Part shown: piece by piece, positions 471-64,000 of the stretch
Layout of the letters: each line of letters opens with the position of its first letter
Numbering within the stretch: position 1 is the first letter of the stretch
DNA from: Bugula neritina
Taxonomy: Eukaryota > Animalia > Bryozoa
Reading direction: 5' to 3'
Assembly (NCBI GenBank): GCA_964035545.1
Contig: OZ037769.1
Coordinates: 2,976,001-3,040,000 of the forward strand
DNA: 64,000 bases
Notes under the pieces: model-generated
What the model was told of the DNA's origin: nothing
The model's input: only the letters and a program-made list of their open reading frames with translations
The model's database searches: none
Translations under genes and position numbers: made by a program

Positions 471-3400
471 TATTAATTTGCAGGCGACTTTAGCAAACAG
501 GAATCCGAAAGTGAACAGATATATACATGGATACTGAGTATATATGTCTCCAGACGGCTCAGACTTTTTGGCTATTACAACGGTTAATGCGAGAACAGTG
601 AATATCGGAAATACAGGAAATAGCACACTTGTATCCTGCCAAATAAAAGAAAATAACAATATTATTAGCCAACAATTTGTATATAAAATGGAAAACAATT
701 GTTTAATTTCAGCTCTAACACATCAAAACAAATCTTGTACTAGAATTTATTAGAATTAAAAACATGTTGAACCATATCTCACTGATATCCCTTCAAGACT
801 TACTTACTATTTAAATAAATTCACTGAATTGAATTAAGTGACAATTTGCAATAAATGCAATAATGAAATAAATACAATAACTGCCAACATATTGAGTGTA
901 TTTACACATTCTATCTATAGCTACATGAAAACAAGAGAAATCAACCAACAACTTGTATTTGTAGCAGTTCCACTACATTAGTTTAAAATAAATTTGAAAT
1001 TACTCTTTCACTTTACAGCAGGGCTGGCTATGTTTATATTAGATAGAGCTGCATGCAGACCAAATCAATTTTCTAGTAAATTTTATTTGTAGGTCTTCAA
1101 TTTATTCATTAGCATTTATTGGGCAATGGGCAACTTCAAGTTATCATAAATCATTGCTGATGTGATATCTGGCAAATATAGCCAACTCCCACCTAGACCT
1201 CTGGCATATATACAGCTTCTTTTTGTTGTTTTTGAGTCACTAACCATTTTTATGTTTTTTATTCAAAATTAGAATATACTGCAATAGCATACTGAACCAA
1301 TAAACTATAATGCAATTTATAAAATAATTGTAATTGTTATGAATTGTGATAGACAATACATGCAGAAGATGCTGTAGCAATAGTAAGAATAAATTTGGTT
1401 ATGTAATCAAATTGAAGTTGATGTCAATAGATGTTTATGCTTGCAGTGACTAATATAGCTGATAATTATGTTGGTTAGTTGTTGAATGGCAGATTAATTA
1501 CTATTATTATTTCCTGAGGACAACTATTGCACCACCGGTTAGAATTAACCCAAGGTGTTTCACTTAAATAATTATGACTCATCTTGATTAGGTATTGAAA
1601 ATAGGCTATTTTAATTTTCAAATGTTCAAAATTTTAATAGGAAGTAACTTAGGTATTATGTGTTTTCAGAGATAGCAGTATATATACCCTGTGTTTCAAG
1701 ATTTCGAATAATCCTGGGACTAATCTTGTATTAATTGTGTTAAGTTACCGAAATTTATTGAACTGAATTAATTATAACTTGACCAAACATTTTGAAAACA
1801 CAACCCTGAAGCTGTACTCAGGTTGTATAAAGCTATATCCTTGCATAAACTAAGATGTTGTTTTTAATATTCTAGCACTTCAGAAATGCAGCTAGACAGA
1901 CTTGGTTAAAAATAAAGAGTATTGTAAAAAGAAGACAACTCTGAAGAAGCTCAAAGTAAGATAACTCCCTATTACGTATTTGATTGACTTGTCATTGAAG
2001 TAAGTTACTCCATACAAGATGCCCGAAGCCAGAAAATACCATGACAAAAATTTTGGTATATATAACAGGTACTTTTCCCAGTTAATCAAGAAAGTAATGT
2101 ACTCAATACAATAAAAACCTACAGGGCTTTATAATGCATTACACTTGTGCTAAAAAATTACACCTCTATAAATGCTAGAAGTAAAATCAGATTAAAAAAC
2201 AAAATCTAGTGCACTACGAACTTAACAATACTTACTGCAACAGTAGAGCCATTTCTGCCCACTCCTCCTTTAATAAATATAGTATGGAAAGCAGGCAATG
2301 CTTGGAAAATTCCTCCCAGTACTACTGTGGCCACCAGGACTTTGTTGAGGGCAACTCCCAACATCGGCACCTGTCACATATCCAAACAAATAAAATACAT
2401 GTTACAACATTTCTAAATATCTCACAAATATTTGAATTCAGCAGGTCAAATTACATCAGTTGGACAACTTTTATAATTTTAAAGCGAAAATAATTTTTCT
2501 CTTGTTTTTCCCAGTTTGTACTAAATGAAGTGAGTTTGGCCCATTTGGGGAAGTTGATAATCTTCTTGAATCAGTTTTGTGAGATTTGATTGGACTTGTA
2601 AAACTCTAAAATCCAGTTAACACGAGTTACAACTCAACTACATTTTGTATGTATGTACTATGTAGACCTACAGAAATATGCCACTGCAAAGCATTAATGC
2701 AAGTGGAAAGACAAAACACTATCTCAACTATTAGAGGTTTAGTTTTTCACATCAGAAACGTTATGAATCTTAGTTTACTTTATTTCAACTAACTGTACAA
2801 GTCATTGATTACTTAGCCAATCAGCTAGCCATGCTATGAATCGTCCAGTTAGCCACGGTACGAACTGATGATGAAAGTAATCAGGTTTCTAAGTCACTAC
2901 TATGATTACTTATCTAGTGAGTCACTGCTTATCATCAGCTTACGGAGATATACTGTGATTGTATTGGGAGACTATACAATATATTGTTGTATAATTATTG
3001 TATATAATATACGTATCATTATATTATATTATATTATATACATCAATATGATATTATACTATATTATATAATATACACTATTATATAAATTATATTATAA
3101 TATAGTAAACGTTTCTGTCTACTCTAAACCGCTTCCAGTTCCCTCTGCCAATGTTTTGTTGAAGAAGTCAAGAGCAGATAACTGCCGAAAAGCTAAATAA
3201 TTGTAATAATATATTACAGTGCTCCCTCCATATCTCACGGATCTAGTTCTCACGAAATTCCATAGGTCACAAGAAGAGCTTGGACCCTGTTTTGTGGCTT
3301 ATGTATGTGTGGATAAGGACAAAATGGCCAAATTTAACGGATCCATGAGTTAAATCTGGCATTCTACTATGTCATGAATTGAGGTTTCACGACCTGCAGC

Positions 3401-4620
3401 TTAGTGAGATAAGGAGGGAGCATTGTATATCATTACTAATTATGTTCTAAATAACCTGGAAGATTGAAATACACAATTTCATAAAATGACACATCACTGA
3501 GTTTCAGCTACTAATACTTGTGTTGGTTTGCTTAGCTATGTAGACCAACCTGCATGAGCCAGATCTCTTCTCCAAACACACCAGACATCAGGAAACCAGC
3601 CATCATCAAAAACTGCATCTCCACCACATCAAACCTGGGAAAGTGAGAATATAGGAGTTATCCTCCCAACATAATTGATTTTAAAACTTGAGATTATTAA
3701 GTTATGTCATGCAAATTATTCAGCTTGTAGCAAAAGTGAATTTTCTTCAAAAATTGTCTAAAAAACAGTAAAAAGTAGAAAAGACTGAAAACATTTATAA
3801 ACCTTACATTTTCTCCCTTAATACAGGACAACTGTTTACTATAATTATTATTCCAACTGTTATATAAGATAAAAAATTTCCATGTTTGCAGCAACAGATT
3901 AGTAGCACATGTTACATTGCAAGAATACAGCTGAGCAAGACTGTGTCCTCAGATTATGAACACAAATGTTTGGTTGAGTGCTCCTCCCCCCCCCCCCTTT
4001 CTTACTACTAGCAATAACTAATACTTATACATGTATAGTTCCCAGACCAACATACTGCAATGTGTGAGAATAAACTGGACAGCCCATAAAACTTTATCTT
4101 CTAGAACCAAATTTGACTGTTGCACAATTACAATAAAATACTATACCTATTCCATAAATTGAAATATTTTTAATAAAAATCTTCTAATCCCTCATTTCAG
4201 TTACTCAACACTTTAAAGAGATATTTACATTTATTCTTCGTAATAAAAAACAAGCAGCCTTAATTTATTGATTCATTGATTTGAAGATTGTCGTCAAGTT
4301 GAAAAGATTGTCATGTAAATACCTTTTGAAAGGTTCTAGAAACTTACTTGCCAAACTTGAGAGCTCCAGTGCAGTAGGTGACCCAGTGAGCGAGGTAGAA
4401 AGCCATGTATGCTCCACAAGTTAGTAGCATGAGGTACTCCAGCTCTAGCCGACAGTGTATAAGAGACGCAACCACCAGCACAACTACAAGTGTTGGCATA
4501 TAATACAGTAGAACACGGGCTAGACAATCTCATCAACCAACAGTTTTAGACAAAGCATATCCTATCATAATACTATTTATATTAAATATATTAAAAAAAT
4601 ATATATATGAAATATATTAA

Positions 4621-10501: not shown

Positions 10502-13500
10502 GAGAAACATTGTTGATTTATTACTTTATTAGGTAAAGTAATTATACTGATATTTCGGGCACCACTGTGCCCATCTTCAGAGTAGCAATATACGTTTGCA
10601 CGCACGCACACACACACACACACACACACACGAGAAGAAATAAAATGAGATTTGATTAATATAATGACATTTATTACTAGTAGTTTCGTACACAAGATGT
10701 TGTGCACTTGTCAGATAAAATTGATGAGTGTACGAAACTATTAGTAATAAATGTCATTATATTAATCAAATCTCATTTTATTTTTTCTAATATATATATA
10801 TATATGTATATATGATAATAATAATATATATATTTTCATGTATATATTTATTATATAATAGATATAGATATAACAATAATGATATCTTAGTCAGATCACC
10901 TGTTAACTAAACAAGCGAATTCAAGAAGATTTGCTTTACCAGGTTTTATGACTTGCTTTAATGCAAATAGAAAAATAATTACAACTGATAATTTGTAGCT
11001 GTGAAGATACTGCAAGAAGTTGATGATCCCAATCTTAAGCTACAAATGGTGAGTTTGATTTAGCTTAGTTTGTGATTTTAGTCTCGAGTTTTAAGTTTGA
11101 ATTGTTTTGCACAATTTTTTAGACTCCATTCGATCACGTGGCTAATGGCCAAATTTTTAAAAAAAAAAACATTTGATTTACAGTGGATTACTTTTATGAA
11201 ATTTACAAAGTGATTTTGCACTCTCTGTTTGTTTGAGTTAAGCACTAGGTTGCCCCTATATAAAAGTACCACCATGTTTTGAGTGCTTTTTATGAATATG
11301 TTTTGACTTCACGCCCTGTTGTCTGTACCGTCTTTTTGTTCACTCAATTTATGATCCTCCAATCACATTTCAAACCTCAACTGAAGAGCTATTAAATTGA
11401 AATTAAACCTATTTTGTAAAATGTTCTACCTATTGCAGAGTTGGGGTCAATTACATATGAATGTAATTATTTAGAATTACAAATACATGATAATTTGTCA
11501 ATTACAATTATAATTACAGTTGAAATAAATGTAATTAATTACAATTACAATTACTGTTCTCCCAAGAGACTAATAAAAGTTATATAATCTCACTTGTGGG
11601 GTCCAACTACCCAGGGTAAGTTTGAAATCGGAAAACCTTCCTTTTTCTTAACAGTAACGAATAGAGTGATAAATACGACATTAAGTTAATGTAAACTTTT
11701 TATTAAACAGTAAGCATTGCAGGAAAAATATAAATTTTATAAGATTTAAAAGTTTGAAGTAATTGTTATGTAATTATAAAGTAATTGTTAAATTCAATTA
11801 CATTAGCAAAGTAATTGATTACAATTACATTTTTATACATCAATTAAAAATTGCATTCAATTACTTGAAAAAATTCAATTAATTACAATTACAAATTATA
11901 ATTACCCCAACCCTGACCAATTGTCAACTATTCATGGCATGCCTCTACTATCTGCTGTTCCTCCATGGAGCTTTGTTATCAATTCTTCTGCTATACGTGT
12001 TTTTTTTACTTTTGAATAAATATAACAAAACAAACAAACCTAGAAATATTGAGGTGACTATGAATTTTCACCTAACAGGTGCCTCAGTGACTTGTTTGGG
12101 TTGTCAGATCTATTTCTCATACCTGTAATCTTGTTTTGAAACAAGCCAACAAATACGCAAAGTGTTTGTGAAATTCTAAGGGCAGAATCTATGCGCATGC
12201 AGGCACTGCATACAAAGTGCCAGCATGTAGCAACTATCTAAAGTTTGTCCTCTTTTCTATCTGTGCCTTTCATCTGTGCCACTAATCTAATTTTTTTCAG
12301 GATTTCTTTCACATCCAGATAATGCACGGAGACCTAACAGCTAATATCAAAAAGTATCTTCCTTATATAGGTTAGTGTATTCCAAGTGAGCCCATTGTTT
12401 CCTGGTGGTAATTGAGGTTATTATTAGGTTAATGCTATAGAAAATCGCTTGAAGCAGCACAGAGTTGGTGGTCACTGAATGCATTGCTTGTGGTTTGGAG
12501 TCTAGACGATGCGTATACAAATACCCTACTCGGTCACCCCCAACTTGGTGCTTCTTCTAGCAATATTCGAGTTGTATTGCATAAATAATTTTAAAACGTA
12601 TTTTAGCATTCAGCAGTTTGTTACATTATATTATGTTATAATATATTATATTATACAAACTTATGGTAATATACAAACTTAATTCTTTTAAGTCATCTTT
12701 TTTACATGGTAATTTTGCTTAAAAAGTCAAAATGACTCTCTAAAGGCACTTTGTTTTTACTGGAGATATTTAATTGTGGGGGAGGCAAGTGATTGGGAAT
12801 TTATTAGCATAAGTCACTAAACTTGTTTGCGGTTATATTCATCAGATCCACCAGATTTTCTCTTGTCTGTTGGTATTTGACTATCAACTTTGCTTCACTC
12901 ATCAGTAGTGAATTAGGTTATTTGCTCTAACAAATAGTATTCATATGCCCAATAAATAAATTATGCAAATAATTTTTAAAAATATAATTATTGCATTAGA
13001 TGTTTAAATGGTTGTCACTATATTATTCCTATTTATACATATTTTGTATATAAATTTGTGTTTAGAATGATATATTTTATAAAATTTATAAAAAAATTTC
13101 CACCTGCTTAATCTTATATAAAGCGGTGAACAGTTGCCTTCTCCCTGTGGAAATGTGGTACACAAATGGGTTGTTTACTTAAATTTTGATTATTTCCTGT
13201 AATCAGTTTGACCAAAGTGGTTTCAACCAGTTTATTCTAACTAATTTTCATAAACACTAGGTAAGCAGTGAGAGTGCTTTCACCCAAACCGCTGATCAGC
13301 AAAATTGAACAAACCTGATCACTGCATCTCAATAGGACTACTACTTTCAGCTGTTGGTATAAACCTGAGTAAGCAGTTAACAAAACAGTGTAAATCCTTA
13401 ACTCTTCTACTTACATCTCCTTCAATCTTATCTCTCAACACTTAATCTCTATATTCTGCACACTCATTCATTCACCTTCAGGTGGCACATTTCATCATTA

Positions 13501-22599: not shown

Positions 22600-22673
22600 T
22601 GGCCAGTACGGGGCTCGAACCCGCGACATTCGCGTTATTAGCACGACGCTCTAACCAACTGAGCTAACCGGCC
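22600..22673 (-). tRNA. tRNA-Ile (anticodon AAT)
   Basis: Reverse complement GGCCGGTTAGCTCAGTTGGTTAGAGCGTCGTGCTAATAACGCGAATGTCGCGGGTTCGAGCCCCGTACTGGCCA: cloverleaf with A and B boxes, anticodon loop CTAATAA, followed by a T-run on the minus strand. Confidence 0.96.
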
Positions 22674-62200: not shown

Positions 62201-62858
62201 CTCAGCTATGAGAGTTGGATGCTAAATAAATTTGACATGCGAACAGATTTGTTGCTTCAATTTAAATACCATAAATTGATTTAATTTAATTGGAGTTATT
62301 ATAAATATTTTCTTAGTGTATCAGAGAATGACATATTTACCAAAATGAATATAATATGTTTTCAATTCTTGTGCTCCTAATAATTCATATGTGTGTTGTA
62401 TCTACTTAAGTTTTTTAAAATGTTGAGTATTTTTATGATAGCTGCTAGAATAAATTAGTTTTCTACAAGCTAGATTTACATAATATAGATATGCTGGTAT
62501 GTCTTGAGTAGAAGTGATTACAAGTTTATATGTAAAAACTTCAAATTCTACAAAAAAAATCCATTAGAAAATATTATGATTTCGTTAACCAGGTAATGTC
62601 ATAATCAATAGTTTTATGTAAAGTCTACATTTTATGTGATATTGTTCATGCATGTATAATTATAGCTCATTTTAGCTCACGTATACTTCAGCTAATGTAT
62701 TATCATAACTCTTATATGAGCTGCCAGGTGGCTTCAAGTCACACTTATTAAATATGATTTAATGGAAACATTAGTTTCTTTCATATCAAGAAGGTGTTGG
62801 CCATGGCGCTTTGTTTTGTGTTGTCAAGGAGACAAACACTAAAATACTTGCTGCACAC

Positions 62859-62859
<1 letters not shown>

Positions 62860-62930
<71 letters not shown>
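62860..62930. repeat. (AT)n microsatellite abutting the Penelope-like element
   Basis: Directly visible. Confidence 0.95.
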
Positions 62931-62936
<6 letters not shown>

Positions 62937-62979
62937 GTATACGAGAAACATTGTTGTTTTTTTACTTTATTAGGTAAAG

Positions 62980-63030
62980 TAATTACACTGATATTTCGGG
63001 TACCACTGTACCCATCTTCAGAGTAGCAAT
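62980..63030 (-). ncRNA. Minimal type-I hammerhead ribozyme motif (family 1, inverted copy)
   Basis: Minus strand ATTGCTACT-CTGAAGA-T-GGGTAC(AGTG)GTACCC-GAAA-TA-TC-AGTGTAAT. Confidence 0.82.
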
Positions 63031-63542
63031 GAATGAAATTCAAAAATTATTATGTTACGTTAGACATTATGCATGACACAAAGAATAGAGAGTGACAGTT
63101 ATTGTAAATTATTGAAACTTAAAGGAGATAATCTTATTTTATATATTACGCAGGTCAAAAATTATACTGATTTTTTTTGCATAAAAAATAAATTAGAGTT
63201 GACAAAAAATAGATATCCAAATATAAAAACAGCAAGAATTAGTGAAACTATGTGAGAGTTGAGTATAGTGTGGAGCTATTGATATAGTTTTAGTGGTATG
63301 GAGTAATTTTGTTTATTGAGTTGCGGTTTTATTTGTTTAATGTCTTGCTGATAATCTATGTTTTAGGCCGTCTGTTTATTCTCAGAATTAAGTTGCTATA
63401 TGTAACATGTAGCGCAAGGGTAACAACTTTGACCCTTAAGAACTACCTACCTGTTCTGTATCGCCATTGCATGACACAAGCGTTACATGTTAACTGTGTC
63501 ATGCATAACGTCTAACGTAACATAATAATTTTTGAATTTCAT

Positions 63543-63595
63543 TAATTGCTACTCTGAAGATGGGTACAGTGGTACCCGAAATATCAGTGTAATTA
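63543..63595 (+). ncRNA. Minimal type-I hammerhead ribozyme motif (family 1)
   Basis: TAATTGC-T-ACT / AGT-GTAATTA stem I, CTGAAGA core, 6-bp stem II GGGTAC/GTACCC, GAAA, palindromic ATAT in place of stem III, AUC cleavage triplet. Confidence 0.85.
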
Positions 63596-63623
63596 CTTTA
63601 CCTAATAAAGTAAAAAAACAACA

Positions 63624-64000
63624 ATGTTTCTCGTATACCTATTTATAATCAAATTACTAGCTCGTAAAGATATATTTAAATTAATCGAAGAGAAACACGG
63701 GCGACAAATGAGATTATCAGCAAGACGTTACGAATCACTCAAGATTAAATCAACAAAGATCAAAGCTGACATAAAGTATATTCTAATTTGCAAAAGAGAA
63801 TCTTTATCTCCTACATTTTCTCAAGTGAAATTGTCTATTCCTGGTAAGAACTACAAATTAAAAGCTAAAATTTCGAAACTAATTATGGAACAAGAATTAA
63901 AGAACAAACACTACCAGAAAAAGAAGGTACAACAATCTATCACTGAAGTCAAGCAATATCTTCAAAAGAAATTAAGTTTACTTTTTTATCTAGTCCTTAT
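63624..64000 (+). CDS. N-terminus of putative Penelope-like retroelement polyprotein (partial)
   Basis: Stop-free for 125 codons to the window end (absent from the ORF track): MFLVYLFIIKLLARKDIFKLIEEKHGRQMRLSARRYESLKIKSTKIKADIKYILICKRESLSPTFSQVKLS...; basic helical N-terminus directly after the hammerhead. Confidence 0.65.
   Translation, partial: MFLVYLFIIKLLARKDIFKLIEEKHGRQMRLSARRYESLKIKSTKIKADIKYILICKRESLSPTFSQVKLSIPGKNYKLKAKISKLIMEQELKNKHYQKKKVQQSITEVKQYLQKKLSLLFYLVL

What the first reader, a model, noticed from the sequence alone, without database searches (positions are those of the whole stretch)
62928..64000. Penelope-like element with two oppositely oriented minimal hammerhead ribozymes and an intact-looking ORF
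Seen: a ~150-bp inverted repeat (62928-63080 / 63496-63646). Each arm has a full hammerhead core (CUGAAGA, 6-bp stem II, GAAA, AUC) with stem III reduced to the palindrome AUAU. An ATG ~30 nt downstream of the plus copy opens a stop-free 125+ codon ORF, and an extra hairpin (TGCATGACACA...TGTGTCATGCA, ~63468-63506) precedes it. Known: Penelope-like elements carry such minimal hammerheads in their pLTRs, often with an inverted 5' pLTR copy, and these are thought to cleave as dimers. Inference: a young, possibly active family in which self-cleavage would define the RNA 5' end just upstream of the start codon.
Basis: partly seen in the sequence, partly recalled or inferred. Interest (0 to 1): 0.8.

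Follow-up and report, generated by a model that had tools for sequence, protein, structure and literature searches.

The report
Defective Penelope-like retrotransposon with hammerhead motifs
This is a real but broken copy of a young Penelope-like jumping gene (reverse transcriptase plus GIY-YIG nuclease) sitting in a TA repeat, with the small hammerhead ribozyme motifs and inverted partial copy that are already textbook features of such elements.

Summary
A 153-nt, 99% inverted repeat (62928-63080 / 63495-63647) carries a minimal type-I hammerhead motif in each arm, with 0.01 such motifs expected by chance per 64 kb. An ATG at 63624 opens a frame that reaches the window end.

Extending the contig shows a 3.5-kb Penelope-like element (PLE) inserted in a (TA)n microsatellite. 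From left to right it has:
- an inverted 5'-truncated copy;
- about 150 nt of filler;
- a 187-bp tandem partial copy (pLTR);
- a 2757-bp unit encoding RT plus a C-terminal GIY-YIG nuclease;
- a third hammerhead in the 3' pLTR.

The family has at least 371 hammerhead-bearing copies at 93-100% identity. They are mostly 5'-truncated, have two fixed 3' ends 34 nt apart (the published PLE "tail"), and about 30 of 35 junctions lie in (TA)n. Hammerhead stems covary within the genome and in relatives at 38-46% protein identity.

- The window copy is defective (a +2 frameshift and a stop just beyond the window).
- The "extra hairpin" is a junction accident involving a captured host-gene fragment.
- None of about 65 copy 5' ends lies at the cleavage site, and full-length copies span it, so cleavage did not define the template 5' end.

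All of this matches published PLE biology, so it is a new member of a known kind.

The parts
62861..62927 (.). (TA)n microsatellite, left flank of the insertion (target)
   Evidence: Sequence. The right flank, beyond the window, is also (TA)n, from L031 4439. About 30 of 35 independent 3' junctions of the family abut (TA)n.
62928..63341 (-). Inverted 5'-truncated copy of the element's 3' end (unit positions ~2307-2723), ending at the 'no-tail' 3' terminus
   Evidence: 100% complementary to L031 3988-4404. The inner boundary is good to about 3 nt.
62990..63021 (-). Minimal type-I hammerhead motif of the inverted copy (C17 = 62990 on the minus strand)
   Evidence: Exact 32-nt match. Descriptor hit.
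63339..63354 (-). 16-nt fragment of the ORF 5' region (unit 30-46) joined to the truncated inverted copy
   Evidence: Exact 16-nt match to unit 30-46 ([I13], 79). Inferred to be a template switch or internal deletion.
63359..63496 (-). Filler copied from a host gene on another contig (exon-intron boundary, C4:17195216-17195351, 96% identical).
   Evidence: Only two places in the genome. Alignment and host context.
63495..63681 (+). 5' pLTR: 187-bp tail end of an upstream tandem partial copy (unit 2571-2757)
   Evidence: Direct repeat with L031 4252-4438, 98%.
63554..63585 (+). Minimal type-I hammerhead motif, predicted cleavage between C63585 and A63586
   Evidence: The monomer MFE fold gives stems I and II with an open core, z = -2.4.
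63624..64000 (+). Start of the single ORF (N-terminal domain, RT, GIY-YIG). It continues beyond the window to L031 4055 and is broken there by a +2 frameshift and a TGA.
63648..63681 (+). 34-nt 'tail' between the two alternative 3' termini of the family (unit 2723-2730 and 2754-2757), inside codons 9-19 of the ORF
   Evidence: The two classes of 3' ends are seen. This matches the published 30-40 bp PLE tail between two RT start sites (PMC8557442, PMC11167929).
63682..64000 (+). First 319 nt of the 2757-bp full unit, which ends at C5:3042438 with a third hammerhead at C5:3042311-3042342

Best explanation
The locus is one composite insertion of a young Penelope-like retrotransposon of the Penelope/Poseidon type, and this copy is dead (one frameshift, one stop).

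Shown:
- The 2757-bp unit is preceded by a 187-bp tandem partial copy (pLTR) and, head-to-head, by an inverted 5'-truncated copy.
- The whole insertion lies in a (TA)n microsatellite.
- The family's copies are mostly 5'-truncated and end at two fixed sites 34 nt apart, inside the first 58 nt of the ORF.
- Every pLTR carries a minimal type-I hammerhead motif whose stems covary.

Inferred from published work on the Anolis element PAc (PMC11167929): the nuclease nicks AT-rich (here TA-repeat) DNA on both strands. The RT then starts internally on the element RNA at the two sites that bound the 'tail'. Priming on both strands plus template switches gives the inverted-plus-tandem arrangement. In this insertion the switches also picked up 16 nt of the ORF 5' region and about 138 nt of a host gene.

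The hammerhead has no helix III hairpin (only AUAU). It is therefore expected to cut only as a dimer or with protein help, trimming longer-than-unit transcripts 38 nt upstream of the start codon. The RNAs that were actually copied into the genome ran uncut, or religated, across the cleavage sites. [quoted passage not shown]
For: - Anatomy.
- Protein: RVT_1 E 1.7e-10. PF01541 GIY-YIG E 6e-5, 23.7 bits against a 22.6-bit cutoff. Invariant GIY, YIG, R, H, E and N positions across 10 relatives. An 809-aa intact homologue at 97% identity and 363 relatives.
- Family behaviour: at least 371 hammerhead copies against 0 in the control. 5'-truncation series. Two 3' termini and (TA)n targets.
- Hammerhead: 0.01 expected per 64 kb. 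In-genome stem II variants are C-G (9 exact), U.G (5), U-A (more than 100 exact) and C.A (1). Relatives at 38-46% protein identity keep the motif 14-51 nt upstream of the ATG, with entirely different stem II and stem I sequences and C3-G8 / U3-A8 / G3-C8 core pairs.
- Templates span the cleavage site, and 0 of about 65 5' ends lie at it.
- Literature: PMC4209133 (min-HHRs in pLTRs, unpaired nucleotide 5' of stem II, opposite-strand pairs 100-700 bp apart); PMC8557442 (pLTR, inverted 5' copy, 30-40 bp tail, microsatellite bias); PMC11167929 (both-strand cleavage, internal RT start sites, protein-assisted hammerhead not needed for insertion).
Against: - No Rfam hammerhead model reports the motif even at E<=10.
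- Self-cleavage is untested, and the AUAU helix III is too weak to be predicted by thermodynamic folding of a dimer.
- Clade assignment rests on motifs, not on a tree with named references.
- No fully intact full-length copy was seen in this assembly, although only 56 of 442 candidates were scored.
- Transcription, promoter and RNA ends could not be examined.
- The both-strand priming and template-switch steps are carried over from another PLE, not shown here.
Confidence: 0.88

Rival explanations
1. One reading: hammerhead self-cleavage in the 5' pLTR routinely defines the 5' end of the element's functional RNA (mRNA and template), 38 nt upstream of the start codon.
For: The motif lies at a conserved short distance (14-51 nt) upstream of the ATG in this family and in 8 relatives. 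The stems covary, so the RNA fold is under selection.
Against: The window insertion and the other full-length copies are contiguous for 74-732 nt upstream of the unit, across the cleavage site. None of about 65 copy 5' ends maps to unit position 2662; the nearest case retains C17. A cleaved RNA would be uncapped with a 5'-OH. In Anolis PAc, no RNA-seq reads begin or end at the site and cleavage is dispensable for insertion in vitro (PMC11167929).
Confidence: 0.2
2. Circular-template model: the two pLTR hammerheads release a 2757-nt unit RNA with 5'-OH and 2',3'-cyclic phosphate ends. This RNA is ligated into a circle, and the RT copies the circle for more than one turn, giving the tandem partial copy (pLTR).
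For: The hammerhead-to-hammerhead distance equals the unit length. Insertions are longer than one unit by variable amounts and are contiguous across the cleavage site. The model was proposed for PLEs in PMC4209133 and PMC6765202.
Against: Transcripts of genomic tandem copies explain the same anatomy without a circle. No circular RNA evidence is available here. PAc data point to unprocessed RNA as the dominant substrate (PMC11167929).
Confidence: 0.2
3. The hammerhead motif is a passenger, or a vestigial or 'parasitic' motif, with no role in this family's life cycle.
For: N-terminal-EN PLEs (Naiads) proliferate without hammerheads, and the authors raise the idea that HHRs may simply parasitise PLEs (PMC8557442). 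In vitro activity of metazoan PLE hammerheads is low (PMC4209133).
Against: In this genome stem II changed through a G.U intermediate to a fully compensated pair: U.G 5 copies against C.A 1, and the compensated form is the one that amplified. Relatives keep the core, the unpaired nucleotide, G10.1-C11.1 and the palindromic helix III while every stem base differs.
Confidence: 0.12
4. The 153-nt inverted repeat is the functional unit in its own right: terminal inverted repeats of a DNA transposon or foldback element, or a hairpin-RNA / small-RNA source.
For: The arms are near-perfect. A read-through transcript would form a 153-bp duplex.
Against: Both arms are simply 3'-end segments of the PLE unit. 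The inner ends differ from insertion to insertion: inverted partners are truncated at unrelated positions. No transposase is present, and the left arm ends exactly at the family's fixed 3' terminus.
Confidence: 0.03

Closest known systems
Canonical EN+ Penelope-like elements of the Penelope/Poseidon clade (e.g. Penelope of Drosophila virilis, Poseidon PAc of Anolis carolinensis)
   Same: Shared features:
[quoted passage not shown]
- pLTRs formed by a tandem partial copy;
- an adjacent inverted 5'-truncated copy;
- heavy 5' truncation;
- a 30-40 bp optional tail bounded by two RT start sites inside the start of the ORF;
- AT-rich targets;
- a hammerhead in the pLTR.
   Different: The hammerhead cleavage site lies 38 nt upstream of the ATG here, whereas in PAc it is 26 nt inside the ORF. 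The RT start sites are at about +24 and +58 of the ORF, against +111 to +118 in PAc. Insertion is almost exclusively into (TA)n microsatellites. Clade membership was judged from motifs only.
Minimal hammerhead ribozymes of metazoan PLEs (Cervera and de la Pena 2014; Lunse et al. 2016, cited through PMC6765202)
   Same: Type-I topology, CUGANGA...GAAA core, one unpaired nucleotide between A9 and G10.1, a G10.1-C11.1 pair, a long helix II (6 bp), a short helix I, and no helix III hairpin but a palindromic AUAU. The motif occurs in both pLTRs, and in pairs on opposite strands a few hundred bp apart.
   Different: Nothing structural differs. The motif is highly uniform in this genome (more than 100 identical copies), as in D. 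virilis and unlike the heterogeneous sets of most genomes. Cleavage was not tested here.
Animal non-LTR retrozymes (small non-coding hammerhead repeats, proposed non-autonomous PLE derivatives)
   Same: Both have a hammerhead at the unit boundary and insert into (TA)n in this same genome (earlier notes of this scan; bioRxiv 10.64898/2026.07.22.740005).
   Different: This element is autonomous (2.4-kb ORF). The 271-nt retrozyme of this genome shares no stretch longer than 12 nt with this PLE unit.

Membership tests
Penelope-like elements (EN+, C-terminal GIY-YIG) | Reverse transcriptase domain in a single long ORF, with the PLE-typical DKG motif upstream | tested here: met
   RVT_1 E 1.7e-10 on the 775-aa open frame of a sister copy, and E 8e-8 on the window copy's piece. 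The DKGKG motif is visible in the translations.
Penelope-like elements (EN+, C-terminal GIY-YIG) | GIY-YIG endonuclease domain at the C-terminus | tested here: met
   The C-terminal 130 aa of the window copy hit PF01541 with E 6e-5, 23.7 bits against a 22.6-bit cutoff, covering profile positions 3-75 of 78. The catalytic Y, Y-G, R, H, E and N columns are invariant in 10 relatives. A PDB profile search gave nothing significant.
Penelope-like elements (EN+, C-terminal GIY-YIG) | pLTRs from partial tandem copies, frequent inverted 5'-truncated copy, heavy 5' truncation | tested here: met
   Window copy: 187-bp tandem piece plus an inverted piece of about 416 bp. The same architectures, with varying break points, occur in about 40 loci.
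Penelope-like elements (EN+, C-terminal GIY-YIG) | Optional 30-40 bp 'tail' at the 3' end (two RT start sites) | tested here: met
   3' ends fall at unit 2723-2730 or 2754-2757, 34 nt apart.
Penelope-like elements (EN+, C-terminal GIY-YIG) | RT groups with PLE/TERT RTs in a phylogeny | not tested
   No named reference sequences were available. The 363 homologues found are unnamed.
Penelope/Poseidon clade | CCHH motif in the EN present, and CX2-5CxxC linker upstream of the EN absent (criteria from PMC8557442) | tested here: met
   Checked by inspection of alignment A2. C-x4-C lies between the GIY and YIG motifs and H-x3-H after the arginines; there is no Cys-rich linker in the 60 residues upstream. 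This is motif-based only.
Minimal type-I hammerhead of PLEs | Conserved core (C3 U4 G5 A6 N7 G8 A9 ... G12 A13 A14), H17, stems I and II, an unpaired nucleotide 5' of stem II, G10.1-C11.1, palindromic 15.x-16.x | tested here: met
   Descriptor hits at 63554-63585 (+), 63021-62990 (-) and L031 4311-4342 (+), with 0.01 expected per 64 kb.
Minimal type-I hammerhead of PLEs | Compensatory base changes in the stems | tested here: met
   Within the genome, stem II pair 4 runs C-G, then U.G, then U-A. In 8 related elements, stems I and II are fully different yet still paired, and the 3-8 core pair appears as C-G, U-A or G-C. This was counted by hand, because the MAFFT alignment was out of register.
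Minimal type-I hammerhead of PLEs | Self-cleavage at H17 (as a dimer or with protein) | not testable with these tools
   Needs transcription/cleavage assays. Folding gives only the two-stem scaffold.
Rfam hammerhead families (type I/II/III, HH9, HH10) | Score at or above the family gathering threshold | tested here: not met
   No hammerhead hit at gathering, nor at E<=10 on 62800-64000. These models require a helix III hairpin that min-HHRs lack.

The most novel reading that the evidence does not exclude
The copies of this family record that the RT template always ran across the hammerhead sites and exceeded one unit by variable lengths. The most novel reading still open is that the template is a hammerhead-processed, religated circular 2757-nt RNA copied for more than one turn. 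That would make this an autonomous, protein-coding counterpart of retrozymes. The ribozyme would then be kept by selection, as the C-G to U.G to U-A path in stem II suggests, and its stem II hairpin would also serve as a snap-back point for some head-to-head copies.
Probability: 0.2. Interest if true: 0.55.

Novelty: new member of a known kind. Interest (0 to 1): 0.25.

Why it matters
On its own this is an ordinary, correctly recognised transposable element. Every structural feature (pLTR, inverted partial copy, tail, AT-rich or microsatellite target, minimal hammerhead) has been published for Penelope-like elements.

Its modest value is as clean material. The family is young and uniform, with hundreds of copies, sharply defined 3' ends, almost exclusive (TA)n targeting and an in-genome compensatory change in the ribozyme stem. 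It could serve to test what PLE hammerheads do and how the inverted/tandem structures arise. Both questions are still open in the literature (PMC8557442, PMC11167929).

Tried and rejected
- Rfam scans gave no hammerhead hit, either at gathering on the whole window or at E<=10 on the region. I take this as a limit of the models, not as evidence against the motif.
- The MAFFT alignment of nine hammerheads (A1) was out of register. I therefore used no covariance model or the count of structure pairs, and tabulated the stems by script and by hand.
- Pfam on the whole 228-aa C-terminal piece and on the 775-aa frame missed GIY-YIG. Only the trimmed 130-aa domain passed.
- A PDB profile search with the EN alignment gave only insignificant hits.
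- I tested whether the 151-nt spacer between the arms belongs to the family. It does not: it is a captured host fragment plus a 16-nt ORF piece.
- I tested whether the first 30 codons are unusually conserved at the nucleotide level, as an RT start signal might be. Identity there is only mildly raised: 0.60 and 0.56 overall and 0.43 at third positions, similar to the RT core.
- The fold of the region around the start sites is not significant (z = -0.66).
- RNAcofold of two copies predicts swapped stems but no AUAU helix, which is uninformative.
- I tested whether the genome's 271-nt retrozyme derives from this family. There is no similarity.
- The run accession of the intact homologue's contig was not found in the literature.
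- The species was not identified. The contig is not human: 32% GC, PLE-rich, 216-Mb assembly.

Full report
**Observation.**
The region was read directly. The repeat finder gives arms 62928-63080 and 63495-63647, 153 nt, 99% complementary, 414 nt apart. The plus arm contains CUGAAGA, one extra U, GGGUAC-AGUG-GUACCC, GAA, AUAU and C, in that order. ACU precedes the core and AGU follows the C, which gives stem I, and AAUU/AAUU extends it. The other arm is the reverse complement.

A descriptor written for this architecture required:
- the core;
- 0-1 unpaired nucleotide;
- a perfect stem II of 4-9 bp;
- GAA;
- a palindrome starting with A;
- a non-G residue at position 17;
- at least 3 bp of stem I.

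It finds three hits in the 64-kb window, against 0.01 per window in 100 Markov-1 random sequences. Rfam models do not report the motif at gathering or at E<=10. This fits a hammerhead without a helix III hairpin. The monomer's minimum-energy fold is the two-stem scaffold with an open core (z = -2.4).

**Whole element.**
The window is G000:C5:2976001-3040000 in a 216-Mb, 321-contig assembly with 32% GC. It is an animal-type genome, not human; the species was not determined. I fetched C5:3038001-3044000 as L031, where L031 position + 62000 = window position.

The insertion runs from L031 928 to 4438, with (TA)n on both sides. Its parts are:
- An inverted copy at 928-1343, 100% complementary to 3988-4404.
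- A spacer of about 150 nt.
- A direct 187-bp repeat at 1495-1681, matching 4252-4438 at 98%.
- The 2757-bp unit at 1682-4438.

Hammerhead motifs lie at 1554-1585 (+), 4311-4342 (+) and 990-1021 (-). The two plus-strand motifs are exactly one unit apart.

**Protein.**
The ATG at L031 1624 (window 63624) opens 432 codons. The frame then shifts because of a 2-bp insertion at L031 2854-2855. An in-frame TGA follows at 3366-3368, and the rest is open to 4052.
- A sister copy on C8 is open for 775 codons but stops 34 codons early.
- A public read-set assembly holds an intact 809-aa version, P0001, at 97% identity.
- Pfam finds RVT_1 (E 1.7e-10).
- On the trimmed C-terminal 130 aa of the window copy, Pfam finds GIY-YIG PF01541 (E 6e-5, 23.7 bits, cutoff 22.6).
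- In ten relatives the GIY, YIG, Arg, His, Glu and Asn positions are invariant.
- The DKG motif and a C-x4-C ... H-x3-H (CCHH) arrangement are present, and there is no CX2-5CxxC linker.

By the criteria of PMC8557442 these motifs point to the Penelope/Poseidon type. No tree was made.

**The family in the genome.**
- The 32-nt hammerhead occurs 371 times with up to 3 mismatches, and 0 times in the reversed control.
- Internal DNA finds 5 full-length and dozens of 5'-truncated copies at 93-100% identity.
- Mapping about 40 loci onto the unit shows full units preceded by tandem partial copies of 74-732 bp, many head-to-head inverted partial copies, and 3' ends at either unit 2723-2730 or 2754-2757. 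The 34 nt between those two ends are the published 'tail'.
- Of 35 independent outer 3' junctions, about 30 abut (TA)n.
- None of the full-length copies examined is fully open, but only 56 of 442 candidates were scored.

**Is the hammerhead under selection?**
Within the genome an older subfamily has stem II GGGCAC/GUGCCC. A solo fragment of it lies in this window at 10508-10590, minus strand. Counts, and for the last class, are:
- C-G: 9 exact copies.
- U.G intermediate: 5 copies.
- C.A: 1 copy.
- Fully compensated U-A form: more than 100 identical copies.

Contigs encoding eight relatives at 38-46% protein identity carry the motif 14-51 nt upstream of their ATG. They keep the core, the unpaired nucleotide, G10.1-C11.1, GAA and a 4-nt palindrome (AUAU, AAUU or ACGU). 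Their stem I and stem II sequences are entirely different but still paired. Two have U3-A8 and three have G3-C8 in place of C3-G8. One has a U at position 6, and one has a poorly paired stem II. MAFFT put the short sequences out of register, so I counted these by hand. I did not build a covariance model.

1. 'Intact-looking ORF' is true only within the window.
2. 'Extra hairpin' is a junction accident. One arm (63496-63506) is the first 11 nt of the 5'-truncated pLTR. The other (63468-63478) lies in a 138-nt filler that is 96% identical to an exon-intron boundary of a host gene at C4:17195216-17195351 and occurs nowhere else in the genome. Between that filler and the inverted copy sit 16 nt of the ORF's 5' region (unit 30-46). 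This junction looks like a chain of template switches.
3. 'Cleavage defines the RNA 5' end' finds no trace in the genomic copies.
   - The window insertion is contiguous from 91 nt upstream of the 5' cleavage site through the 3' one, and the other full-length copies likewise.
   - Of about 65 copy 5' ends, none maps to unit 2662. The nearest case still contains C17.
   - The 32-mer downstream of the site is not more frequent than the ribozyme itself (326 against 371).
   - This concerns templates, not mRNA, which I could not examine.

The two oppositely oriented motifs cannot pair as a ribozyme dimer on one RNA. On a plus transcript the left arm is antisense and would instead form a 153-bp duplex with the right arm.

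**Mechanism.**
The anatomy fits what has been shown for the Anolis Poseidon element (PMC11167929):
- The polyprotein cuts AT-rich DNA on both strands.
- Reverse transcription starts internally at two neighbouring sites in the first part of the ORF, and these sites bound the tail.
- The hammerhead cuts only with protein present and is not needed for insertion in vitro.

It also fits the structural description of PLE insertions in PMC8557442 and of min-hammerheads in PMC4209133. The latter includes the unpaired nucleotide 5' of stem II and motif pairs on opposite strands 100-700 bp apart.

For this locus, the parts, the two 3' ends, the TA targets and the stem covariation are shown. Both-strand priming, template switching and dimeric or protein-assisted cleavage are inferred.

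**Earlier notes of this scan.**
Notes on other windows of the same genome describe hammerhead retroelements and a 271-nt retrozyme in (TA)n. My own counts agree on TA targeting and fixed 3' ends. The retrozyme shares no similarity with this PLE unit. The hairpin signal proposed there beyond the start sites was not supported or refuted by a single fold.

**Verdict.**
The finding is real and largely correctly read, but it is a member of a well-described kind. 

Noticed in passing
window 10508-10590 (-): A solo, roughly 85-nt 5'-truncated tail of an older subfamily of the same PLE, lying between a (GT)n and a (TA)n run. Its hammerhead has stem II GGGCAC/GUGCCC, a compensatory double change relative to the young subfamily.
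   Followed up: partly
window 63339-63496; host source G000:C4:17195216-17195351 (L045 1501-1636): Between the inverted and direct copies lie 16 nt of the ORF 5' region and a 138-nt fragment, 96% identical to an exon-intron boundary of a host gene on another contig. This looks like a chain of template switches (or filler capture) during insertion.
   Followed up: partly
L065 (G000:C2:24025079-24025174); also L081, L083, L084: Some head-to-head copy pairs are joined exactly in the loop of hammerhead stem II, giving a perfect palindrome (snap-back at the stem II hairpin). Many short copies have 5' ends clustered within the hammerhead (unit 2618-2657). The sample was biased towards such cases.
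   Followed up: partly
L050:605-638, L051:231-264 (U3-A8); L052:825-857, L053:2680-2711, L054:2560-2592 (G3-C8): Related elements from metagenome contigs carry hammerhead cores in which the C3-G8 pair is replaced by U3-A8 or by G3-C8. The three G3-C8 elements also lack the two cysteines of the nuclease's CCHH motif. I found no description of natural G3-C8 hammerheads in the held literature.
   Followed up: partly
L046 (Logan SRR4020086 contig, 2613 nt): An intact 809-codon version of this family (97% identity) exists in an independent public read set, whereas every full-length copy examined in this assembly is broken. The contig spans the hammerhead uncut.
   Followed up: no
window 22600-22673 (-): A tRNA gene (64.4 bits), the only Rfam gathering-level hit in the window.
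   Followed up: no
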